This document shows positions 5,231 to 19,093 of a stretch of DNA of 64,000 bases, piece after piece (within the stretch, counting starts at the first letter, position 1; every line of letters begins with the position of its first letter). The stretch spans positions 124,001-188,000 of the IMG/VR virus record IMGVR_UViG_3300020469_003050; one strand, written 5' to 3'. A model generated the notes under the pieces. It worked only from the letters and a program-made list of their open reading frames with translations, did not search any database and had not been told where the DNA came from. The translations under genes were made by a program, and so were the position numbers.

Positions 5231-5258
5231 AGCCCGGCTTTATGTCGGGCTTTTTTAT
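5231..5258 (+). terminator. rho-independent terminator
   Basis: AGCCCGGC-tttat-GTCGGGCT followed by a T-tract. Confidence 0.85.
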
Positions 5259-5293: not shown

Positions 5294-5680
5294 ATGAAAA
5301 GAATTATTAAACTAGACCCAGATATAAATCCAATAACAGTTAAAGACGGTAGAGGTATAATAAGTACATTCTATCCACAAACAACTGATATCAAAGAGTG
5401 GAGTTATATAGTAACTCTCAAAGGGTCTGTAAGAGGACATCATCTACACAAAGAGTTTGACGAATATATTATGTTTGTAGAAGGCAGTGGCGTATATACT
5501 GAATTAACAGACGGAGAAGAACTCGTTACTCCTGTAGCAACTGGTGATTGTATCTTTATTCCTAGACTAACACCTCATACGTTTTACCCAACTTCTGATT
5601 CAAAAGCAATCGCTCTTATAACAAAGAAATGGAATGATTGTGATGAACCTTTGACAAGAGTAAACAATGAAGAAACGTAA
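5294..5680 (+). CDS. cupin, NDP-sugar epimerase/isomerase-like (RmlC/FdtA class)
   Basis: DGRGII, KGSVRGHHLHKEFDEY, IFIPRLTPHTF. Confidence 0.75.
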   Translation: MKRIIKLDPDINPITVKDGRGIISTFYPQTTDIKEWSYIVTLKGSVRGHHLHKEFDEYIMFVEGSGVYTELTDGEELVTPVATGDCIFIPRLTPHTFYPTSDSKAIALITKKWNDCDEPLTRVNNEET

Positions 5681-6893
5681 AAAGAATATCAGAATGATTT
5701 TAAATGAACGTACTACTTGTAGAGTATGTGGAAGTCCTGTAAAAGAATTACATGACTTTGGTAGAATACATATCAATGATTTCCCTACAACACCCGATGA
5801 TACTCCTGGCGAGGCACCAATGGTATTAGACCAATGTGAGGAATGTGAGTTAGTTCAACTTAGACATACAGTTAATCCAAAGATATTATATGGTGAACAC
5901 TATTGGTATGAGAGTGGATTGAATTCTAAACTAATGAATAACTTATTTGATATTGCAGGATACGTAAATGAGTATACTGATAAAGGCGATGTAGTATTAG
6001 ATATCGGTGCGAATGATGGTACGTTGTTAAGTGCGGTTAAGTCAGACAGATATAGAATAGGTTGCGAACCAGCACCTAATCTAATTAAGAAGTTAATGAA
6101 AAACTGTGAAGCAACTATAAACGATATGTGGCATTATAAACTAATGCAAGGAAAGAAAGCAAAAGTTATTACTGCTATTGGTATGTTCTATGATATGGAT
6201 AACCCAAATGATTTTATCTATAGTGTGAATGAAGCATTAACAGATGATGGCATATTCATTGCACAGTTAATGACACTTGCTCCTATGCTTAAAATGAAAG
6301 ACTTAGGCAATGTATGTCATGAGCATTTAGAATACTATAGTTATAAAAGTCTTGTAGAACTATATGAAACTAACGGTCTTGAAATCTATAAAGTAGTAGA
6401 GAACGATATACAAGGTGGAAGTTATCAACTATGGGCTAGAAAAAAGAACGAAGGCAGTATAGAATATTTTGAAGACTTATCTTCTTTAGAAACATTCTTT
6501 AAAGATGTAGAACGTAATGGTATGTTGTTAAGAACTGTATTACAAGATTCAAAATCAAATGGTAAAAAGAATTATGTATATGGTGCTAGTACAAAAGGAA
6601 ATACAATGTTACAGTTTTGGAAACTACATGATTTATTCGAAGGTGCCGCAGAAATACATCCAGATAAAGTAGGAAGATATACAGTTGGAACAGGCATACC
6701 TATTGTACATGAAGATGATGCAAAGAAAGATGCAGACTTATTCTTTGTCCCTAATTTTGGTTTCAAAGATATGTTTGTTGAAAAAGAAAGTGAATGGCTT
6801 GAACAAGGAGGAAGAATGCTCTTTGCAATGCCAGATGTTAATGTAGTAGAACACAAAGGAAAAAATGGAACAAAAGATAGTATACGTGACTAA
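5667..6893 (+). CDS. NDP-hexose 3-C-methyltransferase (TcaB9/EryBIII/NovU-like)
   Basis: Zn site CRVC...CEEC, YWYESG, VLDIGANDG, CHEHLEYYS, YGASTKGNT. Confidence 0.88.
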   Translation: MKKRKKNIRMILNERTTCRVCGSPVKELHDFGRIHINDFPTTPDDTPGEAPMVLDQCEECELVQLRHTVNPKILYGEHYWYESGLNSKLMNNLFDIAGYVNEYTDKGDVVLDIGANDGTLLSAVKSDRYRIGCEPAPNLIKKLMKNCEATINDMWHYKLMQGKKAKVITAIGMFYDMDNPNDFIYSVNEALTDDGIFIAQLMTLAPMLKMKDLGNVCHEHLEYYSYKSLVELYETNGLEIYKVVENDIQGGSYQLWARKKNEGSIEYFEDLSSLETFFKDVERNGMLLRTVLQDSKSNGKKNYVYGASTKGNTMLQFWKLHDLFEGAAEIHPDKVGRYTVGTGIPIVHEDDAKKDADLFFVPNFGFKDMFVEKESEWLEQGGRMLFAMPDVNVVEHKGKNGTKDSIRD

Positions 6894-7020
6894 AGAACAG
6901 ATAACTTGTATGGGAGAAGATGGAGACCACCCTAAAGTTTATTATACTCTTAAAAAAGGTGAAGCAGTTTGCGGATATTGTAATATCAAATACGTACTAG
7001 TTAAGGAGAAAGAAAAATGA
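6865..7020 (+). CDS. zf-CHCC zinc-finger protein (51 aa)
   Basis: MEQKIVYVTKEQITCMGEDGDHPKVYYTLKKGEAVCGYCNIKY...; C-x6-H-x13-C-x2-C pattern; RBS AAGGA; ATGA overlap with the next gene. Confidence 0.8.
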   Translation: MEQKIVYVTKEQITCMGEDGDHPKVYYTLKKGEAVCGYCNIKYVLVKEKEK

Positions 7021-7910
7021 AAATCGCAATAACAGGTGGGGCAGGATATGTTGGTTGTAGATTAAGTGAACAACTATTAAACAACGGACATGAAGTTATT
7101 TGTATAGATTGGTTAAAGTATGGAGTACAACCCATATTAAACATATTAGATAGAAAAGGATTTCATTTACACAAGATAGATATTTGTAGTCCAGAAGTAG
7201 AACCTATTCTAAAAAGTGCAGATGCAGTAATTCATCTAGCAGGTATTGTAGGCTATCCGTCATGTGAACGTGAGCCTGACTTAGCATATAGAGTTAACGT
7301 AGAAGGAACTAATAGAGTTATAGATGCTTCTGTAGGTAAACCTTTTGTATATGCAAGTACAGGAAGTGTATACGGTGAACTTGGTAAGACATGTGATGAA
7401 ACATGTGAGACTAATCCAATTAGTACATACAGTGTTTATAAACTTGATGGTGAAAAGAAATTAAAAGGAACTGATGCAGTTATACTAAGACCAGCAACTG
7501 CATTTGGTGTGAGTAATAGATTAAGACAAGACTTACTTGTTAATGACTTTACTTACAAAGCAATAGCTGAAAAGAAATTGGTCTTATTTGAAAAGCACTT
7601 CAAACGTACTTTCTTAAGCATTAACGACTTGGCACGTTCATTCAGATGGGCGTTAGAGAAATACGATATTATGAAAGGCGAGATATGGAATGTCGGTGAT
7701 GAAACTTTAAATCATACTAAGTTAGACATTGCACAGATTATTAAAAGCAAAGTCGATTATGAATTAATTATTAACGATGAATTATCTCACGATAAAGATG
7801 GCAGAGACTATTTTGTTGACTATACAAAAATTAGAAACATCGGGTTCACTGCTACCGAAACTCTTGAAGATGGTATTGATAGTTTAGTTAAGTTGTATCA
7901 CGCCGCGTGA
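7017..7910 (+). CDS. NAD-dependent epimerase/dehydratase (extended SDR)
   Basis: ITGGAGYVG, VIHLAGIVG, ASTGSVYG, YSVYK (YxxxK). Confidence 0.9.
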   Translation: MKIAITGGAGYVGCRLSEQLLNNGHEVICIDWLKYGVQPILNILDRKGFHLHKIDICSPEVEPILKSADAVIHLAGIVGYPSCEREPDLAYRVNVEGTNRVIDASVGKPFVYASTGSVYGELGKTCDETCETNPISTYSVYKLDGEKKLKGTDAVILRPATAFGVSNRLRQDLLVNDFTYKAIAEKKLVLFEKHFKRTFLSINDLARSFRWALEKYDIMKGEIWNVGDETLNHTKLDIAQIIKSKVDYELIINDELSHDKDGRDYFVDYTKIRNIGFTATETLEDGIDSLVKLYHAA

Positions 7911-8971
7911 TTTTTAACAACACTTGCAATCTTTTTTACGTCTTCTTCACGTAAATTAAACTGACCAGGTAAATGCAAACCTCTACTTGCTAGTTCGTCT
8001 GCTATTGGTGTAGGCGTTCTGTACTTTCTATGAAAAGGTTGATTACAAAGACTATCGTATACTGCACGACAACCTATACCTTCTGCACGTAGTTCTTCTA
8101 CGAGATTATCTCTTTTGCTTACTAGTATCTCTGGATACGTAGGTGTCTGATGTTCTAAATCTGTAGGGATAAAGTCTACTACTTTCTTTAAATGTTTACG
8201 ATACCATTTGAATAATTGTTTCTTGTGTTGTACGATGAATGGTAACTTCTTCATTTGTGGCACACCGAATGATGCTTGTAAGTCTGTGAATTTAAAATTC
8301 AATCCCATTACGTTATATACTTCTCCGACTTTAACTGTTCTGCCAAAGTTTTTTATAGCATGAATTTGTTTACTAATATTCTCATCATTAGTAACTATGC
8401 AACCACCTTGTCCTGTAGTAATAATCTTTGGTGCACCGAAACTAAATATTCCCATGTCACCCATAGTACCACAGTGTACATCATTGACTGTTTTACTTCC
8501 TAATGCTTGTGCAGAGTCTTCGATTACAATCTTACCACTCTCTCTTAGAGATTTAATTTTTTCTTCAACGTCTTTAGGATATCTACCATTGATTGCTGAT
8601 ACAAATATAACTCTACAATCTGTTGGTATCTTATCAAAGTTTATACAGTAATTGAATGGGTCAACATCTACTATTACAGGAACACCGCCCATTAATATTG
8701 CACCATTACATGTAGCCGCTTGAGTATATGCACTTACGGCAAACTTCTCTCCTGGCTTGATATTAGCTATCATAGAAGCACACAGGAGACCCGTAGTAGC
8801 ACTTGTTACCATGTGTGCATACTTGGCACCTGTATAGTCACATATAAGAGATTCTAATTCTCTGGTTTTATCGTGTTCCATAATCCACCCACCAGAGTTG
8901 ACGTAGTTATAAACACTCTCAATTTCTTCTTTCCCGTATACGGGATTCATGTGACTATTCTTTGTGAGCAT
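7898..8971 (-). CDS. DegT/DnrJ/EryC1/StrS PLP-dependent sugar aminotransferase
   Basis: VIEDSAQALGS, FSFGAPKIITTGQGG (PLP lysine), GLNFKFTDLQA. Confidence 0.93.
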   Translation of the reverse strand: MLTKNSHMNPVYGKEEIESVYNYVNSGGWIMEHDKTRELESLICDYTGAKYAHMVTSATTGLLCASMIANIKPGEKFAVSAYTQAATCNGAILMGGVPVIVDVDPFNYCINFDKIPTDCRVIFVSAINGRYPKDVEEKIKSLRESGKIVIEDSAQALGSKTVNDVHCGTMGDMGIFSFGAPKIITTGQGGCIVTNDENISKQIHAIKNFGRTVKVGEVYNVMGLNFKFTDLQASFGVPQMKKLPFIVQHKKQLFKWYRKHLKKVVDFIPTDLEHQTPTYPEILVSKRDNLVEELRAEGIGCRAVYDSLCNQPFHRKYRTPTPIADELASRGLHLPGQFNLREEDVKKIASVVKNHAA

Positions 8972-9920
8972 TTACAAAATTCTCCATCTTATGTTTTACG
9001 TGTTCGTAGAAAATCATATTTCCTTCGATACTTGGATGAACCCAATTAAATAAGCCTTTATCTTCTAATTGCTTCCAGACATCATATTGCTCATGTATGT
9101 AATCAATAATGCTTGGCTCAATGTTATTTTTCTTTATCGTTGAACCTTTCCACGACATTATTGGATTCATAATCAAAGACATAAGTTGTCTAGTACTTTC
9201 ACCAGGTCTCCAAGTGTATTTATCTAAATTGTGAGCCTGCATATGTTTTTCTATGTCTGCTTGTTTGATATAAATCTTCAATGTTTGATGTAAGAAGTCT
9301 GCACCTAAATTTGGATTCATACCTTTGATGCCTGCATGTTCACATAGTATATTCTGCCAACTAGGTTCTAATACTGTAAGATTTTCATATGGTTTAACAT
9401 CTTCATATGTTATATCTGTATGAGCGCCTAATATTCCAATCGGTACTTCTAAACTATTCATTGCCTCTAAATCTAAATGTAAAAGTTCGTTTCGTTGTTC
9501 TAACCAATCTGGGTTCTTAAAAAATCTATCAACCCATGATCCTACATTGATGCCCTTAGTTATTATTTCTGATTCTTGATAAGAGGGCCAACACATCTTT
9601 CTTGTTTCTTTTTCGTAATACAATCTTGCTATCGGGTCACACATAACCCAAATCACAGGTTTCTTCTTTACTTGATTAGAAATGTTTCCAGATGATAAAC
9701 ATCGTTGTACACAAGTTAAATTACCTATACCGTGAGTAGGTAACCATGCATGTCTCTTTTTGCCAAACGTATGATTAAATTCTTCTGCAAACATATCTCC
9801 TATGTTTATATCTTTTCCTTCACCGTCATTTCCTAAAGGTGTAGAATAACTTTGTACAGCCCAACTAGGACCTATGTAAATAATGTCGTTGTCGTATAGG
9901 ACATTATCTGATACAAACAT
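8955..9920 (-). CDS. SGNH-like protein
   Basis: IYIGPSWA near the N-terminus and NWVHPSIEGN at the C-terminus. The likely start is the ATG at 9920, just after the fcl-like stop; the ORF track extends to 9977. Confidence 0.5.
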   Translation of the reverse strand: MFVSDNVLYDNDIIYIGPSWAVQSYSTPLGNDGEGKDINIGDMFAEEFNHTFGKKRHAWLPTHGIGNLTCVQRCLSSGNISNQVKKKPVIWVMCDPIARLYYEKETRKMCWPSYQESEIITKGINVGSWVDRFFKNPDWLEQRNELLHLDLEAMNSLEVPIGILGAHTDITYEDVKPYENLTVLEPSWQNILCEHAGIKGMNPNLGADFLHQTLKIYIKQADIEKHMQAHNLDKYTWRPGESTRQLMSLIMNPIMSWKGSTIKKNNIEPSIIDYIHEQYDVWKQLEDKGLFNWVHPSIEGNMIFYEHVKHKMENFVNAHKE

Positions 9921-9921
9921 G

Positions 9922-10827
9922 TCATGCTTCTTGTGTTCCATTATCATAATACCACTTATATGTTTTGGCGAATGCATCTTCCATAGAGTATTTAGGAACC
10001 CACCCTAACTCTTTTAAACGTGAGTTGTCTATCGCTCTGTTTTTAATTCCTTCAGGTCTATCAGTATTGAACCAAAGTTTGCCTTTGTACCCACTGACTT
10101 TAATTAATAGTTCAGCTATTTCTCTAATAGAAATCTCAAAACCACTTGCTACGTTAACTGTATCATACTTGTCGTTGTTTAGAATTATATCCATTGCCTC
10201 AACTGCATCTTCAATATAAAGTATATCTCTGCTTTGATTACCGGAACCCCATATCTCAATACTGTCTGAATTGTTTTTACATGCATCGACAAACTTTTGC
10301 ATTAATGCACCTATGACATGTGCATGTTCTCCTACTCTATCGTGTGGTCCAAACATGTTTGTATTGATTGCAGTACGCCAATGTGTATCATACTTTTCAT
10401 TACTTGCTCTACATTGATACATACCCATTAGCTTAGGCAAAGCAGTTGGGAAGTAAGTAGAGTACGGTTCGCCTTGTAGTAACTGAGTTTCTTTATATGG
10501 TTGTTCGCCAATCTCAGGATAACTACATGTGCTTCCTTGTAGTAATACTCTATCTGTTCTTGCAAAACGACACGCCTCAAATATATTATTTTGAATTGTT
10601 AAGTTCTTAATCATTAACTCAAAACTCTTATCTAAGTCTTCTTGTAAGCCACCTACAGTAGCCGCATTTATAACTACGTGTGTGGGCTTCTTTATATGTA
10701 TGTCTTGTTTAGTTGAGATACGTGACGTATAGTTTGCATTTTGAGTATTGCCTCCTTCTGCATCAGGTATTAGTTTCTTATACCACGTTCCTACTAGTCC
10801 TCTATCTCCTGCTATATAGTATTTCAT
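9922..10827 (-). CDS. fcl: GDP-L-fucose synthase-like epimerase/reductase
   Basis: IAGDRGLVG, AATVGG, NLTIQNN, GSTCSYP, NMFGPHD, IWGSGNQSRDILYIED. Confidence 0.85.
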   Translation of the reverse strand: MKYYIAGDRGLVGTWYKKLIPDAEGGNTQNANYTSRISTKQDIHIKKPTHVVINAATVGGLQEDLDKSFELMIKNLTIQNNIFEACRFARTDRVLLQGSTCSYPEIGEQPYKETQLLQGEPYSTYFPTALPKLMGMYQCRASNEKYDTHWRTAINTNMFGPHDRVGEHAHVIGALMQKFVDACKNNSDSIEIWGSGNQSRDILYIEDAVEAMDIILNNDKYDTVNVASGFEISIREIAELLIKVSGYKGKLWFNTDRPEGIKNRAIDNSRLKELGWVPKYSMEDAFAKTYKWYYDNGTQEA

Positions 10828-13439
10828 TCATTCTTTTCCTTATGAATAATAAAGTAATTATTCATTTCTAAAGTTGGACAATGTTTAGTTGACTGAGGCT
10901 TCTGATGTCCTCTATGTTCGCTTTGCCATGTCGCAACGGTGCCTTGTTCATTTCTAAATCCATCAAACGATGAGTAAGCATATGGGAACGGTTGTATGAC
11001 TGCACTGCCGCCAACATTGAGTTGACTCATAATACACTTTGTAAAATAATGTATGTCATTAACATCATACGGTGCAAAGAATGTATTAGTATCTTTATTC
11101 TTGTCTACTACTTGCCATGCCTGTGATATGTTTCCATTTAGTAGTCTTACAATTTTATCTGTTTTCCAGAATACGTTTGACATATTCATAAGTATTATAT
11201 CATATCTTTCCGCAGAATCAAAGTCTTTTCCGTACATATTGTCGCTATTGTCTAACAAATCAAAAGGAGTCTGAGGCTCAATATGTATATCTGCTGGTTC
11301 TGTTATACCTAATGTCTTCCAAATAAGTTTAAGTTCATCAAGCGAATCACCTGCTTCTTTGTATGAGTTAGTAGAATGTACATTTGTAAATCCTTGACTT
11401 TTTAAGAAGTGAGGCATAAATCCAAAGTGTGTTCCTATATCAAGTATCTTAATATCTTTAGGTGCATAGTTTAATCCTAAGTTATCAAGTATCATACTAT
11501 GATTAACCCAATATGCAGACTCTAAAGATGACTCTAGGTATTGTGAATGTCTTTTTAGTTTCTTAGTTAATACTTTGTATTCTTTTTTATAAACGTCTTT
11601 GAATGTATCAAAGTATTGTTCAAACCCTACACCTATCTTTGCGATGTTGTGTGGTTTTCTAAATCTCCAAGAACCATATTCATTATACATTGTCCAATCC
11701 CATTTATAGTTTTCATCTACGAATAAAATTTCTTCTGGAGTTAATTGACGTGGAGTATGTATTTCTTCTTCGTATAATATATCTGCGATGCGCCTTCCTG
11801 AATCTCTGTGACCAAAATCATCGTTCCAATCTTTGCATCTTGCATAATAACCTTCACGATGTATGTCGTCCATATCAATAGTATAACAAACATTTAGGTC
11901 ATACATGTAACCAGTCTGTTCTAACAAGTCATTATTAACATCATCATTGTTTTCTAAGTAACTTGCGTATCTTTTATGAGGGTGTCTTGTAATCGCAATA
12001 GCTGGTATTTTAGATACGTTATCTAAATTATTTTTATCAACTAATCTATATGCAAGTCTAGGTGCAACTTTGTTTTTTATTGCACCGTCTAAATTTCCTG
12101 CTATAGGTATAATTATTGTATTTGTGTTTTCACTATACCATACATATTTTGTCTTTTCTCTTTTAACTTCTTCATCATCTGCTTTGTCTTCTAATTGAGG
12201 TTTGTAGTCTAATAAACTCAAAGACTTGAATGCATCTTTGTATACACTAGGTGTATATACATTTTTATAATGATTGTAGTTGTGTTCTAATATTTCTTGT
12301 AATTCTTTACTGTATGTTATTCCATTCTTTACGTCAACTGTATCTACAATTTCTTTTACAACATCAGTTATAGCATCTATTCTTTCTTCGTAAGCTAATT
12401 CATCATAGCTTTCATCCCAAAATTTATCAAACGTTTTGAACCCTAAGTTTTTTATATTTCTTAAATACTTTCTATCACCTACTATAATGAAAGGTTTCTT
12501 ACATAGTATTGCTTGTGAAAGTTTTTCACTTATCGAAACATACTCATCACTGTGCGTAAACTCTGTAATTAGTTCTACGTATGTTCTCTTTCTATATGGA
12601 AGTAATTCTTCTATTCTGTTTAAAGATGAACTTGCTAACCATTCGTCCCTCTGACAATTCATACTATATGGCAATTCTGTTTTATAATAATCCCATAATA
12701 TTTTATTAGCCATATCTTTATTATATACATCTGGTACTCTGCCGTATATTGCATTTACATCACTATCATATAGAGGATCACCTTCTCCTCTATTATTTGT
12801 ACCAAGAAAACTAAAGTAGAAATTATCTTTTATATTAACTTTCTTTTCTAACAACTTACTTAAAGTGTCAAGTCGATGTGGTCTAATTCTTTTATTAAGA
12901 AATAGAACGTGTTTGTTTGTTAACTCATCTTCTGAAAATTCCCATTTTTCGTGATACTCATTTGATACTTTGTTTTCTTCGTAATCTGAAAATCTTAAAG
13001 TACTAGATGAAACAGTCAAGTAATCTATTGATCCTTTTGGTTTTAGATGTTCATACATAGACCAATACTTTACATTCTTTGCATATGATTTAGTAGAATA
13101 AAACTTATCTATCTTCTCATAGTAACTAAATGGTATAAGTTCTGCACCCATATCGAATACAATACAAGTATTACCTTGCTCTAAATCTTTTGTGATAGAC
13201 TTGTCGTTCAATACTTCATCGATTAGTTTATCAGTAAGAGTTAAGTAATCATACCCATCAAATTCATCTTCATCAAAATACTTACATGCTATCCAAGGAG
13301 AAACAAAATAATATTTTTCAAACCTAACAGTAGGGTGTAACTCATCAACAAAGTTTTGATATAAGTCATAATGCTGAGGTTCGCCATGTATAGTTTTGAT
13401 TAAAGGTGAACGATTTATTATCCATTTATTATAGTACAT
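10824..13439 (-). CDS. 871 aa fusion: glycosyltransferase-like + sulfotransferase-like + class I methyltransferase domains
   Basis: N-part LFLNKRIRPHR...ISEKLSQAILCKKPFIIVG...LGFKTFDKFWDESYD; middle ITRHPHKRYASY...FVDENYKWDWTMY; C-part KILDIGTHFGFMPHFL. Confidence 0.6.
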   Translation of the reverse strand: MYYNKWIINRSPLIKTIHGEPQHYDLYQNFVDELHPTVRFEKYYFVSPWIACKYFDEDEFDGYDYLTLTDKLIDEVLNDKSITKDLEQGNTCIVFDMGAELIPFSYYEKIDKFYSTKSYAKNVKYWSMYEHLKPKGSIDYLTVSSSTLRFSDYEENKVSNEYHEKWEFSEDELTNKHVLFLNKRIRPHRLDTLSKLLEKKVNIKDNFYFSFLGTNNRGEGDPLYDSDVNAIYGRVPDVYNKDMANKILWDYYKTELPYSMNCQRDEWLASSSLNRIEELLPYRKRTYVELITEFTHSDEYVSISEKLSQAILCKKPFIIVGDRKYLRNIKNLGFKTFDKFWDESYDELAYEERIDAITDVVKEIVDTVDVKNGITYSKELQEILEHNYNHYKNVYTPSVYKDAFKSLSLLDYKPQLEDKADDEEVKREKTKYVWYSENTNTIIIPIAGNLDGAIKNKVAPRLAYRLVDKNNLDNVSKIPAIAITRHPHKRYASYLENNDDVNNDLLEQTGYMYDLNVCYTIDMDDIHREGYYARCKDWNDDFGHRDSGRRIADILYEEEIHTPRQLTPEEILFVDENYKWDWTMYNEYGSWRFRKPHNIAKIGVGFEQYFDTFKDVYKKEYKVLTKKLKRHSQYLESSLESAYWVNHSMILDNLGLNYAPKDIKILDIGTHFGFMPHFLKSQGFTNVHSTNSYKEAGDSLDELKLIWKTLGITEPADIHIEPQTPFDLLDNSDNMYGKDFDSAERYDIILMNMSNVFWKTDKIVRLLNGNISQAWQVVDKNKDTNTFFAPYDVNDIHYFTKCIMSQLNVGGSAVIQPFPYAYSSFDGFRNEQGTVATWQSEHRGHQKPQSTKHCPTLEMNNYFIIHKEKNE

Positions 13440-14686
13440 TAAATCAGACTCCTTTCTGCTTTAATACTATCTTTAGTTTTCTTAAATTCATGATTAGTTT
13501 TCTTTCCACAAAATATTGAACATGTTATTAATCGTTTATCTCTGATATCACGACTTTTAAAATTATCTGGCCATCTGCCTTGAAACATTGGACCGTTTAT
13601 TATATCTTTCAAACTATTATATTCCAAACTTATATTTCTTGTACCATATGAGTTAATGAAATCTTGCAACTGTGAAACTTCATATGAACTAGGATTAGCA
13701 TAGTATTTACTTGCAGTAAAACAACAAGGAAAAACTAAACCATCGTGACCTATAAAAATACCCTTTCTAGGTATAGCAACACAATGAATATCTGTTTGAC
13801 CTAATTCTATTTCATGAGGAGATAATGTTCTTTTGTTATCTATAATTTGTTTATCCATTCTGGGTTTCCAGAATGCTTTTGGATCATTAAATTTTTTAGC
13901 TAACTCATCTGGTTCAATCGATTGTTCTTCTGACTTAGTAAAGCCTGCATCTTTTAAGTATAGTTTAATTTCATTAGTATTTAAACTCTTATCTTGTTGT
14001 TCTATAAAGTAATCTAATTGACCATCATCTTTTAATACTTTCATCCAACTATTATATTTTCTACCATCTTCTGTAATAGGTTGATTAACAAATCCTAATG
14101 CCTCTTTAGCAAAGAACTGTAGCAACCCTATATCTACTGCTAGTTGTTTTGCTTCTTCGACTTGATGTTGGTTGTGCTTAAATACAAGAAACTCCCATTT
14201 GCCTCTGCCACCCGCTTTAACAAACCACTTCATTGCATTCATTATCTTTTTCCAGTGAGTTCCTCTTCTGTAAATATGATTTGTATCTTCAAGACCATCT
14301 ACACTAAAAGTTAAAATACATCCTTCATCACTAAACAACTTTCCTAATTCAGTCCAAAATTCTTCATTTCTACCACTAGCATTAGTATTCATTGTTACGT
14401 ATATTTTAGGATTTATACTTTTTATATATTTTAATATATTAACTAATTCTGGATTAGTCATTGCATCGCCGTAGTTTCCGCATAATTGTAAACCATATAA
14501 CTGAGCGATAAATTCATTTGGCAACCAAGATTTTAATCTATCTAGTGTTAGATATGTTTCTTTATAAGAAGTATTCTTTGGTCCTCCTTGTTGTCTACGA
14601 TTGCATATAGGACATTTGGCATTACAAAGACTGCTCATTTCTAAGTCTAAGTGTAGTATATCTTTGTAAAGATAAAGTAAAGACAT
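13439..14686 (-). CDS. radical SAM protein with C-terminal SPASM/twitch-like cysteines
   Basis: CNAKCPIC, LCGNYGD, FSVDG, YRRGT; C-terminal C...GLVFPCC...CSIFC. Confidence 0.9.
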   Translation of the reverse strand: MSLLYLYKDILHLDLEMSSLCNAKCPICNRRQQGGPKNTSYKETYLTLDRLKSWLPNEFIAQLYGLQLCGNYGDAMTNPELVNILKYIKSINPKIYVTMNTNASGRNEEFWTELGKLFSDEGCILTFSVDGLEDTNHIYRRGTHWKKIMNAMKWFVKAGGRGKWEFLVFKHNQHQVEEAKQLAVDIGLLQFFAKEALGFVNQPITEDGRKYNSWMKVLKDDGQLDYFIEQQDKSLNTNEIKLYLKDAGFTKSEEQSIEPDELAKKFNDPKAFWKPRMDKQIIDNKRTLSPHEIELGQTDIHCVAIPRKGIFIGHDGLVFPCCFTASKYYANPSSYEVSQLQDFINSYGTRNISLEYNSLKDIINGPMFQGRWPDNFKSRDIRDKRLITCSIFCGKKTNHEFKKTKDSIKAERSLI

Positions 14687-15873
14687 TAGAAATACTCCCT
14701 AAACTCAGGTAAATAATCTTTTATGTCCTGCTTTCTTATTTCATCTAAGTTCTTAGTATACTCAATCGCTTTTTGCCATTTATCTTTTCTATCAGGACCA
14801 CTAAACATTTTTTCAAATTCTCTTAGCTTCCAACTTTCAAACACGTTAGAAAATTTCTTATGTATTCTATCTCTCATTTCTTTTGGTAATACTGCTGGAG
14901 ATAATATATCTGGGTCGTATACATAATTGTGATGTACCCATACTCCATGTTGTCTATGAAAGAAATTATAAAAATCACCTAGTGTAGAGTAGTTCATCCA
15001 TGATACAGTCTGTGTTACATCAATCTCAAAGCCTTCTTCTTTCAGTCTTAAGAAGTTTTTAATAACTGAATCCCATTGTGTGGGATATCTTATGTAATGA
15101 TTTCTATCTTCTAAATCATCTATGCTACAACTTACTTTCACATGGTCAAACTTTTTCCACAGGTCTATAACTTTGTCATTCATGTTTGTCATGTTAATAT
15201 TATACCAAAGTTTTATATCTGTTTTTCCTAAATCTACTAGTCTTTCTAAAAATCTAAAGTGTTCTTTAATGAGTGTTGGTTCACCACCATTAATATAAAA
15301 TGTTTTTACTCTGTCACAATGTTGTAATAAGTCTTCCCAAAATCCATCACGCTCAGGCCATCTAAAGCCTTCCATCGTATCGTATGTTGTTAACTTAAAT
15401 GTAGTTTTCTTTTGTAGAGCATCGTAATCATTTCTCCACTTACTTGAACTTGCTGGATTACATGTACGACATGCTACATTGCATACATTACCTAATCTTA
15501 ATTCAACAAACTCTAGCTGAACATCTTTCATGAAGCCATCGCTATCAGTGGCTTCCCTAGCAACTTCTACAGTGTACTCAGAATAGTTTTTGATTTCTTC
15601 TGTTCTTTTAGAAGACATGCCTTTAGCTTCTTCGGCATAACAACGAATACATGCTTTAGGTTTTTTACCCTCTAACACTTCTAGTCTTGCTTTCTTATAG
15701 CTTTTGCTATTCATTGTATCAAACACGGTGTCACGGTTTAGATTATAAAATCTATCACCATCACGTGAACTACTCAACGAATTACGATGGTCAGCAACAC
15801 AACAATGTGTTACCCCACCATGCGGGTGCGTTGCAAGGTGTTGAAATAATAATGGACAAAAAGTATCGCTCAC
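14686..15873 (-). CDS. N-terminal twitch-domain radical SAM protein
   Basis: FCPLLF...HCC...CIRCY before CNVACRTC; FYINGGEP; CSIDD. Confidence 0.9.
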   Translation of the reverse strand: MSDTFCPLLFQHLATHPHGGVTHCCVADHRNSLSSSRDGDRFYNLNRDTVFDTMNSKSYKKARLEVLEGKKPKACIRCYAEEAKGMSSKRTEEIKNYSEYTVEVAREATDSDGFMKDVQLEFVELRLGNVCNVACRTCNPASSSKWRNDYDALQKKTTFKLTTYDTMEGFRWPERDGFWEDLLQHCDRVKTFYINGGEPTLIKEHFRFLERLVDLGKTDIKLWYNINMTNMNDKVIDLWKKFDHVKVSCSIDDLEDRNHYIRYPTQWDSVIKNFLRLKEEGFEIDVTQTVSWMNYSTLGDFYNFFHRQHGVWVHHNYVYDPDILSPAVLPKEMRDRIHKKFSNVFESWKLREFEKMFSGPDRKDKWQKAIEYTKNLDEIRKQDIKDYLPEFREYF

Positions 15874-15874
15874 G

Positions 15875-16687
15875 TTATAGCCATCCTAGTTGTTCTAATT
15901 TTGGTTTTAATTTTTCTTTTGTAAACATTTCATAACCTTTAATACTAGGATGATGACTTTCTTCAAACTTATCACCTCTACTTTCTGCATATTCTAGTAT
16001 ACTATCTTCTATATATTCTATTCCTAGTTGTTTAAACGCATCACATAATCTTTCTTTTGAATTCATTAAAGCCGTATCCCAACCAAATACTACTAAAAGT
16101 TTTGCATTGCTTAGTTTTATACCATGCAATACTGCTACTAAACTATACATTGTCCAAGGATTAATCCGTCTTCCTTCACCTAATAATGTATAAATCTCTT
16201 TTGGTTCACGTTTCATTCCAGACTTAATCCATTCATTACACGATGGATCAAATCCAAATGATGTGATATCACCATCGAATTTGTTTTTTATGTTTGTCAC
16301 AGAACCGGGTAGTTTCTTCAATTCTCTTTTCTTATACCCTTTACTAATATTGTCTCCCCACAAATCTTTATTAACATTGTTAATAGGTATAGTAAGTCTT
16401 CCAGGATTAGTTACTTGAAAAATTACTATGTCATTGCTTTTTATTTCTCCATCAAGTAAAGCACATGTATATTTTGCTATTGCACTATGAACACCTGAGC
16501 CTGGTATAGCCCAACTTTTCATTTCAATATTATTTGAATCCCATATGCATGGGTCAAAGTTTTCTATTGCTCCATTTCTTCTCCATACATGACCTGGTTT
16601 GATATCATGGGATAGATGGGTCCAATGATGTTGTGCAGTTAAGCTACAACCAAATGCTCTAATTCTTGTTTTCTTTTTAGCCATCAA
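15875..16687 (-). CDS. SGNH-like protein
   Basis: RAFGCSLT, AIPGSG, C-terminal SHHPSIKGY. Confidence 0.6.
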   Translation of the reverse strand: MMAKKKTRIRAFGCSLTAQHHWTHLSHDIKPGHVWRRNGAIENFDPCIWDSNNIEMKSWAIPGSGVHSAIAKYTCALLDGEIKSNDIVIFQVTNPGRLTIPINNVNKDLWGDNISKGYKKRELKKLPGSVTNIKNKFDGDITSFGFDPSCNEWIKSGMKREPKEIYTLLGEGRRINPWTMYSLVAVLHGIKLSNAKLLVVFGWDTALMNSKERLCDAFKQLGIEYIEDSILEYAESRGDKFEESHHPSIKGYEMFTKEKLKPKLEQLGWL

Positions 16688-17666
16688 TTAATTCTATGTG
16701 ATATATACCTGTACATTTCATAAGTTCAGACATCACTCCTTCTTTTGTTTTGCCTTCCATATTTAATTTTCCTAATTTAACTCTACCACTAGTAAACTCA
16801 GGTTTACTAAAGTCATAATACTGGTCAAGATTATTATTCTTAACCCACTTCGCTAACTCATCTATAGGATAATAAGGTTCTCCTTCATGTCCCCACCTCT
16901 TAAATCTCATTTCAAAACAAGTGTGAACTGTGTTTTGTTGAGAAAGTTTCTTTGTTGTTACTAAAGGTAAATCATTTGAGGCGTAACATGCCATTAAGTC
17001 TTTGCCAACTCTAAAGTAGTCAAGAGTCAAATCACCCCAATCATGATACACTGTAAAATTTTTGTAATCAGCTTCTTCTAGCGGTTCTTGTTGTACTGCT
17101 CCCATGCCGTCACCTCTAGTGACAACACGACACGTTCCAAAAAATTCTAGTTCAGGATCTTCGCCCATATGATATTCAAGGCCTTCCATAGAGTGAACTA
17201 GTTGATTAATTTCTTCTAACCAAACATAGATATCTCCATGCTCAATATATTCAAGAACTTCATTATCTTGTAAATGATTTGACTCATCTTCAAAGTATTC
17301 ATGCAATGCATTCAATTTATCTAATTCTGGATTAACTGAATTTACATCTAATACAAGTTTAGGGTCAACGTTGTTCACTATGTCAACTGTTTTCATTTTT
17401 TCAATTATCCAATTCATTCTATTCTTCATTTGAACAAATCTTCTTTTATCGATAGTTGGATAGAAGTTCCATGATGTTGACCATTCTCCATATGATTGAG
17501 TTTTCTTCATCAATCTAATAAATTTGTTTGTAGTACTACATCGTCTTGTTAAATCATAATCCATGACATAACGTTTGCTTTCGGGTATCTCTTTGACTGG
17601 TAAATACTTATCTCCTCTTAAAGGAGGTATCATCTTTTCCTGAGACATTGTTACTCTGAGTTTCAT
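16677..17666 (-). CDS. hypothetical protein in the radical SAM cluster
   Basis: Long ORF; likely start ATG 17666 forms an ATGA overlap with the upstream stop; no motif recognised. Confidence 0.7.
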   Translation of the reverse strand: MKLRVTMSQEKMIPPLRGDKYLPVKEIPESKRYVMDYDLTRRCSTTNKFIRLMKKTQSYGEWSTSWNFYPTIDKRRFVQMKNRMNWIIEKMKTVDIVNNVDPKLVLDVNSVNPELDKLNALHEYFEDESNHLQDNEVLEYIEHGDIYVWLEEINQLVHSMEGLEYHMGEDPELEFFGTCRVVTRGDGMGAVQQEPLEEADYKNFTVYHDWGDLTLDYFRVGKDLMACYASNDLPLVTTKKLSQQNTVHTCFEMRFKRWGHEGEPYYPIDELAKWVKNNNLDQYYDFSKPEFTSGRVKLGKLNMEGKTKEGVMSELMKCTGIYHIELIDG

Positions 17667-19093
17667 TTTCTTTCCTTTCTTGTCCACCACTCGTATAGTT
17701 CTGGATCTCGTTTGTAAATATCTTCCAAACGATATTGCTCTTGTCTAATTCTATCAAGTTGTTCCTGATAGTTTCTTCCATTGAAAAACTGTTGCTCATG
17801 TGTCTCAGGCCACTGTTCTTCAAATGTTTGCCTATCTTTCATACCTACTAATGTATTTACTAGAGTTTGTTGCTTAGGAGTTGCCCTTGGCTTAATATAG
17901 GCTAGTAAATCGTCTAAATGCCTATTCAATATATGCTTAGGCCATGCAAAAGGACTAAACACAATATCAGCATGAAAGGCGAACATAATCTTTGTTTCTA
18001 TTCTTACGTCTAATTCTAAACTTAAATCAAATAAATCTTTAATACTAAACATGCCGGGACCTGTAATAGTTAAGTCGAATAGCATCTTATCTTTACCACC
18101 TGGTGCCGCTAGTCCTTTCTTAAAGTTAGCTAACCACTCGTCCCATACAATACCTTTACGAATGAACTCTACGATATCACCTGTACCATCGATACTTGCA
18201 CACATTAACCAGTCTTTGAACTGAGGTAGATAATCAAATAATTCCATACCCTTAAATGTTGTACGAGACAAATTAGAGTTATATCTTAAGTGACAATTCT
18301 TTGCAGAACCATTAGCGACCATTTCTTTTAATGCCCACCAATGTATATCATACATAAGTGGCTCTCCGCCTACCCAATATATTTCTTCTACAATACCATC
18401 ACTAATTGCTTTCTTAAATTCTGGTTCAACAACTGTACGCTGAAACTTTACCATCTTCTGTTTTACAGTTGGTTGCATAAATGGTTGATGTTCAATCGAC
18501 CACATGTTGTGTTTCTTCTTTTCTGCTTCCCACGAACTTGATAATTGTTCACCACACATACGACATTTAAAGTTACATAAGTTAGAGTAACGATAGTCAA
18601 ATGATATAGCAGGCATTGTTGTATGACCGTCATCATCTGTCTTATCGAATGCTTCTTGTATCTTGTCTCTGAATAGTACACCAGTAAACCATTTACGATA
18701 AGATGATAGACTTAGAATATCGTCATTACAAACATCACATTGTGGAATACGTTCTCCAGACATTAGTTTCTTTCTAATATCTTTCATGTATTGAGAGTTC
18801 CAATGTTCATCTAATGATGTAGGATTAAAGTCATCTGCATCTGTTTTAGAATCTTTTACTTCACCATATCTTTCATCATTAGATGCATCGATATATTGTT
18901 TCTGAAACGAATGTTCTTCACGTGATGCACAACATAGTCTACGTTCACCTTGAGGAGATATATAGGTATGAGACCACGGAGCCATACAGAAAGTTTTGTT
19001 TTTACTTTCTTCTGCACAACTTCCGTCGCTTTTCCAGATAGGTATTATCTTCTTATTCAAGTGTATAGACTCCAGTTGATTCGTCATATTCAC
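17663..19093 (-). CDS. N-terminal twitch-domain radical SAM protein
   Basis: FCMAPW...LCC...CDVC before CNFKCRMC; YWVGGEP; ASIDG. The probable start is TTG at 19060 (GGAG upstream). Confidence 0.9.
   Translation of the reverse strand: MNMTNQLESIHLNKKIIPIWKSDGSCAEESKNKTFCMAPWSHTYISPQGERRLCCASREEHSFQKQYIDASNDERYGEVKDSKTDADDFNPTSLDEHWNSQYMKDIRKKLMSGERIPQCDVCNDDILSLSSYRKWFTGVLFRDKIQEAFDKTDDDGHTTMPAISFDYRYSNLCNFKCRMCGEQLSSSWEAEKKKHNMWSIEHQPFMQPTVKQKMVKFQRTVVEPEFKKAISDGIVEEIYWVGGEPLMYDIHWWALKEMVANGSAKNCHLRYNSNLSRTTFKGMELFDYLPQFKDWLMCASIDGTGDIVEFIRKGIVWDEWLANFKKGLAAPGGKDKMLFDLTITGPGMFSIKDLFDLSLELDVRIETKIMFAFHADIVFSPFAWPKHILNRHLDDLLAYIKPRATPKQQTLVNTLVGMKDRQTFEEQWPETHEQQFFNGRNYQEQLDRIRQEQYRLEDIYKRDPELYEWWTRKERK

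What the first reader, a model, noticed from the sequence alone, without database searches (positions are those of the whole stretch)
5294..10827. Gene set for a branched-chain (C-methyl) amino-deoxysugar
Seen: cupin epimerase, Zn-binding C-methyltransferase, extended SDR, DegT aminotransferase and Fcl-like reductase lie adjacent. Established: aminotransferase + 3-C-methyltransferase + 5-epimerase + 4-ketoreductase is the logic of vancosamine/tetronitrose-type sugar pathways in actinomycete natural products. Inference: the phage makes a similar rare sugar, which is unusual for a virus. The nucleotide carrier is unknown.
Basis: partly seen in the sequence, partly recalled or inferred. Interest (0 to 1): 0.62.

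Follow-up and report, generated by a model that had tools for sequence, protein, structure and literature searches.

The report
Phage genes for a branched amino sugar
A 343-kb marine phage carries a conserved set of enzymes that most likely turns a GDP-linked mannose-type sugar into a methyl-branched amino sugar and attaches it to something; this is rare for a virus, but it is built from known bacterial enzyme families.

Summary
The gene set is real and lies at the stated coordinates. It comprises a small cupin, a zinc-type sugar C-methyltransferase, an extended SDR, a DegT aminotransferase and an Fcl-like protein.

The five genes stay together in 22 related viral contigs, in at least two gene orders, so the linkage is not chance.

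The actinomycete dTDP analogy holds only as general chemical logic. The closest matches point to GDP-sugars:
- the SDR matches PDB 6vo6 (E 1.6e-58), which I recall as Campylobacter Cj1427, a GDP-heptose C4 dehydrogenase;
- the reductase-like protein matches GDP-fucose synthase;
- the aminotransferase matches GDP-perosamine synthase;
- cellular relatives of the methyltransferase sit beside GDP-mannose 4,6-dehydratase.

The complete phage genome encodes no 4,6-dehydratase, so the "deoxy" part is not encoded. The Cj1427-like enzyme probably makes the 4-keto intermediate.

The Fcl-like protein lacks the canonical catalytic tyrosine in all phage orthologues, and the cupin's role is unresolved. The next gene fuses a GT-B glycosyltransferase to a methyltransferase, and radical SAM genes follow it.

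Verdict: a new variant of known GDP-sugar pathways. The product and the acceptor are unknown.

The parts
5231..5251 (+). Terminator-like hairpin followed by a T-run. It separates the upstream unit (SAM decarboxylase, nucleotidyltransferase-PMI fusion, FG-GAP protein) from the cupin/C-methyltransferase/SDR unit.
   Evidence: The scan reports an 8-pair stem with 6 G-C pairs. The sequence was also read directly.
5294..5680 (+). Small cupin, 128 aa, with an intact His50-x-His52...Glu57...His95 metal-type motif and an N-terminal Asp-x-Arg-Gly. Its role is unresolved: sugar epimerase, 3,4-ketoisomerase, or something else.
   Evidence: Cupin_2 scores 34.7 bits; FdtA scores 19 bits, below its cut-off. 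The profile search ranks metal cupins first (E 5e-8), with FdtA, RmlC and Cap5F at E 0.006-0.008. The motif residues are invariant in 8 phage orthologues. The gene overlaps the methyltransferase gene by 14 nt.
5667..6893 (+). NDP-ketosugar C-methyltransferase of the TylC3/TcaB9/MtmC/KijD1 type, 408 aa.
   Evidence: All three Pfam domains score above their cut-offs. PDB matches: MtmC E 1.2e-30, TcaB9 E 2e-25, KijD1 E 8e-24, all over the full length. Cys18, Cys21, Cys57, Cys60, the SAM motif at residues 110-118 and His218-Glu219-His220 are invariant in 8 orthologues.
6910..7020 (+). A 36-aa ORF with a zinc-ribbon-like His-Pro...Cys-x-x-Cys pattern. Its stop codon overlaps the start codon of the SDR gene. 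Function unknown.
   Evidence: Read from the sequence. It is conserved at 62% in the same position in contig L009 and was not found in the other relatives.
7017..7910 (+). Extended SDR, 297 aa. [quoted passage not shown] Proposed role: the enzyme that generates the 4-keto sugar.
   Evidence: 6vo6 scores E 1.6e-58 (201.7 bits) over residues 2-294; the next structure scores only E 4.8e-17. The Gly-rich motif at residues 7-13 and Tyr138-x3-Lys142 are present. The gene is conserved at 58-97% in related contigs, none of which has a Gmd within 7 kb.
7898..8971 (-). PLP-dependent sugar aminotransferase of the DegT family, 357 aa. Proposed role: converts the keto group (C4 by analogy) to an amino group.
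   Evidence: PF01041 scores 221 bits. The best structure is GDP-perosamine synthase 3bn1, E 2.2e-34. The catalytic Lys182 and the Asp152-containing motif are present, so it is not a ColD/E1-type dehydratase.
8955..9977 (-). SGNH/GDSL-fold protein, 340 aa as the longest ORF; the true start is probably about 15 codons later. It is a candidate sugar O-acyl esterase or transferase. It is an accessory gene, absent from many related contigs.
   Evidence: No Pfam, NCBIfam, PHROG or PDB sequence hit. The AlphaFold model has pLDDT 76.6. All of the top 50 structural matches are SGNH/GDSL esterases or acyltransferases, with Z up to 9.7. Ser38 and His314 are invariant.
9922..10827 (-). GDP-fucose-synthase-like SDR, 301 aa. 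It keeps Ser99, Cys101, Lys132 and His170, but has Thr128 where the canonical catalytic Tyr sits, and a conserved Tyr125 three residues earlier. Proposed role: C3/C5 epimerase on the GDP-4-keto sugar, with reductase activity uncertain.
   Evidence: E. coli GDP-fucose synthase matches at E 3.7e-50 over the full length. The Tyr is replaced by Thr or Ser in all 8 phage orthologues, while the six cellular homologues in the same alignment keep Tyr-x3-Lys. The residue roles are taken from PMC7949155.
10824..13439 (-). An 871-aa fusion protein: a GT-B glycosyltransferase domain (about residues 11-411), a middle region of unknown fold, and a class I SAM methyltransferase domain (about residues 627-870). 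Proposed role: transfers and methylates the sugar.
   Evidence: No family hit. The AlphaFold model has pLDDT 82. Foldseek matches TarM, TreT and OtsA at probability 1.0, plus methyltransferases. VIA-align gives TarM Z 10.7 over residues 11-409, T4 BGT Z 10.4, and methyltransferases Z about 11 over residues 627-868. Both domains recur next to the Fcl-like gene in relatives, as separate genes in some.
13439..14686 (-). Radical SAM/SPASM enzyme, 415 aa, whose gene abuts the glycosyltransferase gene. In some relatives it is fused to the glycosyltransferase/methyltransferase protein.
   Evidence: Radical_SAM and SPASM domains. P0003 and P0004 (1295 and 1291 aa) carry a radical SAM domain. The first 410 residues of P0003 are 54% identical to this protein.
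14686..22886 (-). A run of four N-terminal-twitch radical SAM genes (14686-15873, 17663-19093, 19781-21328, 21318-22886) interleaved with three ORFs of unknown function. They are co-directional and tightly packed with the genes above. Whether they belong to the sugar system is an inference.
   Evidence: NF033640 scores 298-365 bits against a 170-bit cut-off. The gene at 14686-15873 is 80-90% conserved in the closer relatives.

Best explanation
The interval is the core of a sugar-nucleotide tailoring and transfer system of a marine T4-like jumbo phage.

Proposed mechanism (the domain identities are shown; the order of steps, the positions on the sugar and the carrier are inferred):
1. The substrate is a host-made GDP-linked manno-configured sugar, either GDP-mannose or GDP-glycero-manno-heptose.
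2. The Cj1427-like SDR (7017-7910) oxidises it at C4. This gives the 4-keto sugar without 6-deoxygenation, because the phage encodes no 4,6-dehydratase.
3. The zinc-type C-methyltransferase (5667-6893) uses SAM to methylate a carbon next to the keto group. By analogy with TylC3 and TcaB9 this is C3.
4. The stereocentres are reset by the Fcl-like protein and/or the small metal-site cupin. The Fcl-like protein keeps the Cys/His epimerisation pair but has its catalytic Tyr displaced.
5. The Lys-bearing DegT enzyme (7898-8971) converts the keto group to an amine. The product would be a GDP-4-amino-4-deoxy-C-methyl sugar.
6. If the Fcl-like protein still reduces, a 4-hydroxy branch product is made as well.
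7. The adjacent SGNH-fold protein and the GT-B/methyltransferase fusion then decorate the sugar and transfer it. The radical SAM enzymes downstream may modify it or its acceptor further.

The acceptor is unknown. The genes lie at the end of a long leftward block that begins with baseplate and giant structural genes, so a virion protein is my first guess.
For: -
- The module parallels the Campylobacter Mlgh pathway: the C4 oxidase Cj1427, a cupin epimerase and an Fcl-like C4 reductase, as described in PMC7949155 and PMC10680097. All three protein types are present here.
- GDP is indicated by four lines of evidence: the Fcl-like protein matches GDP-fucose synthase at E 3.7e-50; the SDR matches 6vo6 at E 1.6e-58; the aminotransferase's best structural match is GDP-perosamine synthase; and the methyltransferase's closest cellular relatives (41-52% identity, 80 loci) lie in a recurrent cupin-DegT-C-methyltransferase-Nudix-Gmd-GT2 cassette whose Gmd passes the TIGR01472 cut-off at 420 bits.
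- Phage DSL-LC02 has Gmd, a C-methyltransferase and Fcl side by side.
- The complete 342.6-kb genome has no 4,6-dehydratase, and none was found within 7 kb in 22 related contigs.
- The five genes stay linked across rearrangements.
- The aminotransferase has its catalytic Lys.
- The best cellular matches to both the SDR (43%) and the DegT enzyme (36%) lie in one Omnitrophota locus, in the order SDR, hexapeptide acyltransferase, DegT, GT11.
- The GT-B and methyltransferase domains are, the SGNH fold, and the radical SAM-glycosyltransferase fusion.
Against: - No biochemistry exists for any of these proteins.
- That 6vo6 is Cj1427 rests on my memory of Huddleston et al. 2020. The held library did not let me confirm it.
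- SDRs are reversible, so the Cj1427-like enzyme could be a terminal reductase acting on a host-made 4-keto-6-deoxy sugar.
- The phage encodes no NTP_transferase-type nucleotidyltransferase, no phosphomannomutase and no GmhA, so the substrate supply is assumed.
- In canonical pathways an aminotransferase and an Fcl-type reductase both act on C4. One of them must therefore have another role here, or the pathway branches.
- The aminotransferase's preference for the GDP-perosamine enzyme is slight: 122 bits against about 100 for dTDP and UDP enzymes.
- The cupin resembles metal cupins more than known sugar epimerases. Its relation to the cellular WbuC-like cupins is weak (hhalign probability 20%).
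- Two related contigs lack the SDR in the stretch fetched.
Confidence: 0.55

Rival explanations
1. The host's Gmd supplies GDP-4-keto-6-deoxymannose. The phage enzymes C-methylate, epimerise and transaminate it to a 4-amino-4,6-dideoxy-3-C-methyl sugar (a methyl-perosamine or kansosamine-like sugar), or reduce it to a virenose-like 6-deoxy-3-C-methyl sugar. The 297-aa SDR would be the terminal ketoreductase.
For: Cellular relatives of the methyltransferase, and the one in phage DSL-LC02, sit next to Gmd. The Gmd plus C-methyltransferase plus GDP-4-keto-6-deoxymannose epimerase/reductase route has been proposed for virenose (PMC3539893). The aminotransferase resembles perosamine synthase, whose substrate is the 6-deoxy sugar. 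With the Tyr missing from the Fcl-like protein, another reductase would be needed, and the SDR could fill that role.
Against: No Gmd is found in the phage genome or near the module in 22 relatives, whereas DSL-LC02 carries its own. The SDR's only strong structural match is 6vo6, which I recall as a pathway-initiating C4 dehydrogenase. The host is unknown, so its Gmd cannot be checked.
Confidence: 0.25
2. There are two separate products. The rightward unit (cupin, C-methyltransferase, SDR) makes a neutral methyl-branched sugar. The leftward genes (aminotransferase, SGNH protein, Fcl-like protein) make a different amino or fucose-like sugar. No single sugar would be both branched and aminated.
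For: The two sets lie on opposite strands and converge at 7898-7910. A terminator-like hairpin precedes the rightward unit. DSL-LC02 has the methyltransferase with Gmd and Fcl but no aminotransferase in that operon.
Against: All five genes remain within a few kilobases in 22 contigs despite changes of order and orientation. In cellular genomes the methyltransferase is next to a DegT gene in 50 of 80 loci.
Confidence: 0.1
3. The sugar is not for a glycan on protein or envelope. Instead it is put on phage DNA as a base hypermodification, or it becomes part of a small molecule built with the radical SAM enzymes.
For: The GT-B domain aligns with T4 DNA beta-glucosyltransferase as well as it does with other GT-B enzymes (Z 10.4). 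The genome has one thymidylate-synthase-family gene and about 15 radical SAM genes.
Against: GT-B similarity is generic: TarM, TreT and a mannosyltransferase score the same. The single thymidylate-synthase-family hit was not examined further. The genes lie downstream of structural genes.
Confidence: 0.07
4. The pathway is an actinomycete-type dTDP pathway (vancosamine/tetronitrose-like), acquired as such.
For: The methyltransferase family was defined in those pathways.
Against: There is no RmlA or RmlB. No 2,3-dehydratase hit was found, although that control did not ring. The partner enzymes match GDP-sugar enzymes. Similarity to MtmC and TcaB9 (92-110 bits) is far lower than to the cellular enzymes associated with Gmd (about 380-408 bits).
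Confidence: 0.03

Closest known systems
Campylobacter jejuni capsular heptose modification pathway (Mlgh: C4 oxidase Cj1427/MlghA, cupin epimerase MlghB/Cj1430, Fcl-like C4 reductase MlghC/Cj1428)
   Same: The same three protein types act around a GDP-4-keto manno-sugar that is made by oxidation rather than by 4,6-dehydration. The phage SDR's only strong structural match is 6vo6, and the third enzyme is a GDP-fucose-synthase homologue.
   Different: The phage adds a C-methyltransferase and an aminotransferase. Its cupin is a 128-aa metal-site type, not clearly RmlC-like. Its Fcl-like protein has Thr in place of the catalytic Tyr. The phage has no GDP-heptose synthesis genes, so the substrate may be GDP-mannose.
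GDP route proposed for virenose in Coxiella burnetii (Gmd, NDP-hexose 3-C-methyltransferase, GDP-4-keto-6-deoxymannose epimerase/reductase), and the matching Gmd-methyltransferase-Fcl operon of Synechococcus phage DSL-LC02
   Same: A TylC3-family C-methyltransferase is paired with an Fcl-type enzyme on a GDP-sugar (PMC3539893).
   Different: Those systems start with Gmd and give a neutral 6-deoxy sugar. Here Gmd is absent, a Cj1427-like SDR and an aminotransferase are present, and identity to the DSL-LC02 proteins is only 31%.
Recurrent cellular cassette found here: WbuC-like cupin, DegT, C-methyltransferase, Nudix, Gmd, GT2. It occurs in many bacterial and archaeal phyla, and I know of no characterisation.
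   Same: It holds the closest relatives of the phage methyltransferase (41-52% identity), again with a small metal-site cupin and a DegT enzyme beside it.
   Different: The cellular cassette has Gmd and a Nudix hydrolase and usually lacks the Cj1427-like and Fcl-like genes. The phage cupin and DegT enzyme are only distantly related to the cellular ones (24-36% for DegT; hhalign probability 20% for the cupin).
Actinomycete dTDP pathways for branched amino sugars (epivancosamine EvaA-E, tetronitrose TcaB9, kijanose KijD1, mycarose TylC3/MtmC)
   Same: The same C-methyltransferase family, with the zinc domain, and the same general logic of methylating next to a 4-keto group alongside an aminotransferase, an epimerase and a reductase.
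   Different: The carrier differs (dTDP versus probably GDP). The phage has no 4,6- or 2,3-dehydratase. The partner enzymes come from other subfamilies, and sequence similarity is much lower (92-110 bits).
GDP-perosamine synthesis (Gmd plus Per)
   Same: The aminotransferase is most like perosamine synthase, and its lysine motif resembles, as I recall it, that of perosamine synthases.
   Different: There is no Gmd. Methylation and epimerisation steps are added. The score margin over other DegT enzymes is small.

Membership tests
NDP-hexose C-methyltransferase (TylC3/TcaB9/MtmC/KijD1) | N-terminal four-cysteine zinc-binding domain (Pfam Methyltransf_13) | tested here: met
   PF08421 scores 38.6 bits against a 31.3-bit cut-off. 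Cys18, Cys21, Cys57 and Cys60 are invariant in 8 orthologues and align with the MtmC cysteines.
NDP-hexose C-methyltransferase (TylC3/TcaB9/MtmC/KijD1) | Class I SAM-binding domain followed by the C-methyltransferase C-terminal domain (Methyltransf_14), with full-length similarity to solved members | tested here: met
   PF13489 scores 39.1 bits and PF08484 scores 73.5 bits against a 23.5-bit cut-off. MtmC aligns over residues 15-394 at E 1.2e-30.
NDP-hexose C-methyltransferase (TylC3/TcaB9/MtmC/KijD1) | Active-site His-Glu-His segment | tested here: met
   His218-Glu219-His220 is invariant and aligns with the His-Glu-His of MtmC. The catalytic role of these residues is from my memory of the TcaB9 work.
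NDP-hexose C-methyltransferase (TylC3/TcaB9/MtmC/KijD1) | Methylates an NDP-4-keto sugar at C3 (or C5) | not testable with these tools
   This needs an enzyme assay.
GDP-L-fucose synthase (Fcl/GMER) | Score above the NCBIfam equivalog cut-off (NF047922) | tested here: not met
   223 bits against a 500-bit cut-off.
GDP-L-fucose synthase (Fcl/GMER) | Ser107-Tyr136-Lys140 catalytic triad (E. coli numbering) | tested here: not met
   Ser99 and Lys132 are present, but Thr128 aligns with Tyr136. The position is Thr or Ser in all 8 phage orthologues, while the six cellular homologues in the same alignment have Tyr.
GDP-L-fucose synthase (Fcl/GMER) | Cys109/His179 acid-base pair for epimerisation | tested here: met
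   Cys101 and His170 align with them and are conserved. Their roles are taken from PMC7949155.
Cj1427-type GDP-heptose C4 dehydrogenase | Close full-length sequence similarity to Cj1427, with the SDR Tyr-x3-Lys motif and the Gly-rich NAD motif | tested here: met
   6vo6 matches at E 1.6e-58 over residues 2-294, and the next structure scores E 4.8e-17. Tyr138, Lys142 and the Gly motif at residues 7-13 are present. That 6vo6 is Cj1427 is from memory.
Cj1427-type GDP-heptose C4 dehydrogenase | Oxidises C4 of a GDP-manno-heptose, with bound NAD(H) recycled by 2-oxoglutarate | not testable with these tools
   This needs an enzyme assay. The property is described in PMC10680097 and PMC7949155.
DegT/DnrJ/EryC1 sugar aminotransferase | Family domain with the PLP-binding lysine (a histidine there marks the ColD/E1 dehydratases) | tested here: met
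   PF01041 scores 221 bits. Lys182 and Asp152 were read in the sequence.
Sugar-nucleotide cupins (RmlC-type epimerase, FdtA/QdtA 3,4-ketoisomerase) | Significant match to the family model or to solved members | tested here: inconclusive
   FdtA scores 19 bits against a 23-bit cut-off. In the profile search FdtA scores E 0.006 and RmlC E 0.007, behind oxalate decarboxylase and quercetinase at E 5e-8.
SGNH/GDSL hydrolase-acyltransferase | SGNH fold with a block I serine and a block V histidine | tested here: met
   All of the top 50 structural matches are SGNH proteins, with Z up to 9.7. Ser38 and His314 are invariant, and the usual Asp before the His is Asn311. No sequence family model matches.
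GT-B glycosyltransferase | Two-Rossmann-domain GT-B fold | tested here: met
   Residues 11-411 align with TarM (Z 10.7, 273 residues), T4 BGT, TreT and a mannosyltransferase. There is no sequence family hit, and the donor and acceptor are unknown.

The most novel reading that the evidence does not exclude
A widespread lineage of marine jumbo phages makes a sugar not yet described. It would be a GDP-linked 4-amino-4-deoxy-C-methyl hexose or heptose that keeps its 6-hydroxyl. The pathway would be entered through a Cj1427-type C4 oxidase instead of a 4,6-dehydratase, and shaped by an Fcl-derived epimerase that has lost the canonical reductase tyrosine. A GT-B/methyltransferase fusion, working with radical SAM enzymes (fused to it in some relatives), would then install the sugar on virion proteins. 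That would be a virus-specific glycosylation chemistry.
Probability: 0.25. Interest if true: 0.75.

Novelty: new variant of a known kind. Interest (0 to 1): 0.57.

Why it matters
Phage-encoded sugar-nucleotide pathways are known mostly for common sugars and for a few giant-virus amino sugars. A conserved module for a methyl-branched amino sugar, with its own transferase, in an abundant group of uncultured marine jumbo phages would have several consequences:
- It would extend viral glycobiology to branched-chain sugars.
- It would offer a compact enzyme set for making rare GDP-sugars, including a C4 oxidase route that avoids 6-deoxygenation.
- It would provide a natural test of what an Fcl-type enzyme does without its catalytic tyrosine.
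- It draws attention to a widespread cellular cassette (cupin, DegT, C-methyltransferase, Nudix, Gmd) that I believe is uncharacterised.
- It suggests a possible functional link between glycosylation and the many radical SAM genes of these phages.

If the product decorates virions, it may affect host recognition or resistance to degradation in the ocean.

Tried and rejected
- blastn of the interval against 50,697 phage records found nothing. Relatives appeared only at the protein level.
- I could not confirm in the held papers that PDB 6vo6 is Cj1427. Two look-ups by id failed and a text search for the code found only unrelated papers. The identification is therefore marked as memory.
- ColD/E1-type 3-dehydratase reading of the DegT gene, which would have explained its pairing with an Fcl-like enzyme as in colitose synthesis: rejected, because the catalytic lysine is present.
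- Self-sufficient heptose or mannose activation by the phage: no NTP_transferase, SIS/GmhA or phosphomannomutase was found.
- The upstream nucleotidyltransferase-PMI cupin fusion (2770-3543) was considered as the activating enzyme. It lies in a separate unit before a terminator-like hairpin, and it belongs to a virus-dominated family far more widespread than this module. I therefore do not count it as part of the system.
- Orthology of the phage cupin with the cellular WbuC-like cupins: hhalign probability is only 20%. There is no relation to the 134-aa ORF of locus L042.
- Foldseek on the 340-aa model gave no match at E <= 0.001. The full VIA-align search did find matches.
- The T4 late-promoter motif TATAAATA occurs once in the window against 12.3 expected, so it gave no information on timing.
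- The 2,3-dehydratase family search found nothing, but its control genomes did not ring either, so it is uninformative.
- Tools not used: the large profile search, the reads tools and the complex predictor, because no claim here rests on them. No genetic code other than table 11 was needed.

Full report
**Setting.** The window is positions 124001-188000 of a 342,607-bp viral record with direct terminal repeats, which CheckV rates as complete. It is a T4-like jumbo myophage. The window carries the gp25 baseplate wedge, a gp5-like hub lysozyme, the prohead protease, the gp55 late sigma factor and the gp46/gp47 nuclease. The gp47 homologue is 48-55% identical to those of PA5oct, Atu_ph07 and Vibrio phage 2.275.O. 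G+C content is about 34% throughout, including the interval. Close homologues of its genes are abundant in marine metagenomes, some on contigs of 285-342 kb.

**The observation.**
- A 128-aa Cupin_2 protein lies at 5294-5680 (+).
- A 408-aa protein at 5667-6893 (+) has the zinc domain, a class I methyltransferase domain and the C-methyltransferase C-terminal domain.
- A 297-aa extended SDR lies at 7017-7910 (+).
- A 357-aa DegT-family protein lies at 7898-8971 (-).
- A 301-aa GDP-fucose-synthase-like protein lies at 9922-10827 (-).

**Is the clustering meaningful?** A protein-pattern scan of IMG/VR found 22 contigs of 35-187 kb that encode the methyltransferase at 60-100% identity. In nearly all of them the cupin, SDR, DegT and Fcl-like genes lie within 7 kb, at 53-100% identity. 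They occur in at least two different orders and orientations. Linkage that survives rearrangement argues for a shared function. The 340-aa gene is present in only some contigs.

**The C-methyltransferase.**
- It aligns over its full length with MtmC (E 1.2e-30), TcaB9 and KijD1.
- The four zinc cysteines (residues 18, 21, 57, 60), the SAM motif and a His-Glu-His segment (218-220) are invariant in eight orthologues.
- Its nearest cellular relatives are much closer than the actinomycete enzymes: 41-52% identity and about 380-408 bits in 80 loci from many bacterial and archaeal phyla.
- I clustered the neighbours of those 80 genes. The recurrent cassette is a WbuC-like cupin, a DegT enzyme, the C-methyltransferase, a Nudix hydrolase resembling GDP-mannose mannosyl hydrolase, Gmd and GT2 glycosyltransferases. 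A representative Gmd scores 420 bits against the 415-bit TIGR01472 cut-off.
- Among cultured phages, Synechococcus phage DSL-LC02 has Gmd, a 31%-identical methyltransferase and Fcl in a row, followed by seven glycosyltransferases. That is the GDP route proposed on paper for virenose (PMC3539893).

**The 297-aa SDR.**
- Its only strong structural match is PDB 6vo6/6vo8 (E 1.6e-58, residues 2-294). The next structure scores E 4.8e-17.
[quoted passage not shown] 2020). I could not verify the code in the held library.
- The enzyme's role itself is documented in PMC10680097 and PMC7949155.
- The Gly-rich motif and Tyr138-x3-Lys142 are intact.

**No dehydratase.**
- The whole genome has only three extended SDRs: the two in the cluster and a GalE-like one at genome position 274 kb.
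- The best Gmd-model score in the genome is 34.8 bits against a 415-bit cut-off.
- None of the 22 related contigs has a Gmd within 7 kb of the module.
- The "deoxy" step is therefore not phage-encoded. The Cj1427-like enzyme is the natural candidate for making the 4-keto intermediate.

**The aminotransferase.** Its best structural match is GDP-perosamine synthase (E 2.2e-34), although other DegT enzymes follow closely. It has the PLP lysine (Lys182) and the Asp152 motif. It is therefore an aminotransferase and not a ColD/E1-type 3-dehydratase.

**The Fcl-like protein.**
- It aligns end to end with E. coli GDP-fucose synthase (E 3.7e-50).
- Ser99, Cys101, Lys132 and His170 correspond to Ser107, Cys109, Lys140 and His179 of the E. 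coli enzyme. Thr128 stands where Tyr136 should be.
- This position is Thr or Ser in all eight phage orthologues, with a conserved Tyr three residues earlier. The six cellular homologues aligned alongside keep Tyr-x3-Lys.
- According to PMC7949155, Tyr136 performs the final reduction and Cys109/His179 the epimerisations.
- The phage protein may therefore be mainly an epimerase. That would remove the apparent redundancy of having both a C4 reductase and an aminotransferase. This is an inference.

**The cupin.** It has a full His-x-His...Glu...His metal motif. A profile search places it nearest to metal cupins such as oxalate decarboxylase and quercetinase (E 5e-8), with FdtA, RmlC and Cap5F only at E 0.006-0.008. 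"Epimerase" is thus a guess. Its gene overlaps the methyltransferase gene by 14 nt.

**Neighbours that extend the system.**
- The 340-aa protein folds as an SGNH/GDSL enzyme (pLDDT 76.6). All 50 best structural matches are of that fold, with Z up to 9.7, and Ser38 and His314 are invariant.
- The 871-aa protein at 10824-13439 has no family hit. Its model (pLDDT 82) shows a GT-B glycosyltransferase at about residues 11-411 and a class I methyltransferase at about residues 627-870. Both domains recur beside the Fcl-like gene in relatives, sometimes as separate genes.
- The next gene is a radical SAM/SPASM enzyme. In some relatives it is fused to the glycosyltransferase/methyltransferase protein.
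- Four N-terminal-twitch radical SAM genes follow.
- All of these lie at the end of a leftward block that begins with gp25 and giant ORFs.

**Supply of the substrate.** The genome has no NTP_transferase, GmhA, phosphomannomutase or GT2. An upstream gene (2770-3543) fuses a HxGH-type nucleotidyltransferase to a type II phosphomannose-isomerase cupin. However, it lies before a terminator-like hairpin and belongs to a virus-dominated family much broader than this module. I do not count it as part of the system.

**Conclusion.** The most economical model combines a Campylobacter Mlgh-like trio (C4 oxidase, cupin, Fcl-like enzyme) acting on a GDP-linked manno-sugar with C-methylation and transamination. 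This is followed by transfer through a GT-B/methyltransferase fusion.

Three points remain open:
- whether the sugar is a hexose or a heptose;
- whether it is 6-deoxy, which would require a Gmd from the unknown host;
- which carbon is methylated and what the acceptor is.

It is a new variant of known GDP-sugar pathways rather than an actinomycete-type pathway, and it is not unique among phages.

Noticed in passing
whole genome G000; window 13439-22886 and G000 96.3-106.7 kb, plus 9.3, 56.1, 208.2 and 303.0 kb: The phage genome holds 11 ORFs above the cut-off for the N-terminal-twitch radical SAM family NF033640, plus 4 weaker radical SAM hits. None of the 14 control genomes has one above the cut-off. 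A marine T4-like viral genome with 12 radical SAM genes was noted in PMC5332604 without a function.
   Followed up: partly
window 13439-14686 and 10824-13439; proteins P0003 and P0004: In some relatives the radical SAM/SPASM protein and the GT-B/methyltransferase protein form one polypeptide of about 1290 aa. This fusion argues that they work together.
   Followed up: partly
window 6910-7020 (+): An unannotated 36-aa ORF with a zinc-ribbon-like pattern sits between the methyltransferase and SDR genes. Its stop codon overlaps the SDR start codon, and it is conserved at 62% in contig L009 only.
   Followed up: partly
window 2770-3543 (+) (longest ORF starts at 2698): This gene fuses a cytidylyltransferase-fold nucleotidyltransferase (intact HxGH motif, most like heptose-1-phosphate adenylyltransferase) to a type II phosphomannose isomerase cupin. 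In the ESM Atlas this architecture occurs in about 30 clusters that are 98-100% viral. Its substrate is unknown.
   Followed up: partly
window 2340-2723 (+): An S-adenosylmethionine decarboxylase gene lies just upstream of the nucleotidyltransferase fusion. It is 97-98% conserved in close relatives.
   Followed up: no
window 3576-5204 (+): A 542-aa FG-GAP/VCBS repeat protein lies between the nucleotidyltransferase fusion and the sugar genes. It is much less conserved (25-72%) than its neighbours.
   Followed up: no
loci L018-L097 (80 bacterial and archaeal genomes): A recurrent cassette of WbuC-like cupin, DegT, C-methyltransferase, Nudix and Gmd, often followed by GT2 genes, is spread over many phyla, including Pelagibacterales, Omnitrophota, Nitrospinota and DPANN archaea. 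It suggests a common GDP-linked methyl-branched amino-deoxysugar that I do not know to be characterised.
   Followed up: partly
L099 (Synechococcus phage DSL-LC02, OR032571.1, 91-102 kb): This cultured cyanophage carries a Gmd, C-methyltransferase, Fcl operon followed by seven glycosyltransferases and an FkbM methyltransferase. The C-methyltransferase is annotated only as a methyltransferase domain protein.
   Followed up: partly
whole window: The T4 late-promoter octamer TATAAATA occurs once, against 12.3 +/- 3.2 expected from shuffles. This is a marked depletion.
   Followed up: no
window 29302-38160, 38153-42550 and 49205-54082 (-): Three giant ORFs of 2952, 1465 and 1625 aa lie in the structural block. 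The 1465-aa protein has no Pfam hit, and the other two were not scanned.
   Followed up: no
G000 274032-274952 and 278183-278725 (L006:8032-8952 and L006:12183-12725): A third extended SDR, most like UDP-glucose 4-epimerases (E 4.6e-44), and a peptide deformylase gene lie far from the cluster.
   Followed up: partly
G000 69348-70430 (L098:787-1869): A 360-aa ORF gives a weak, sub-threshold Glycos_transf_1 match (16.8 bits). It may be a second GT-B enzyme.
   Followed up: no
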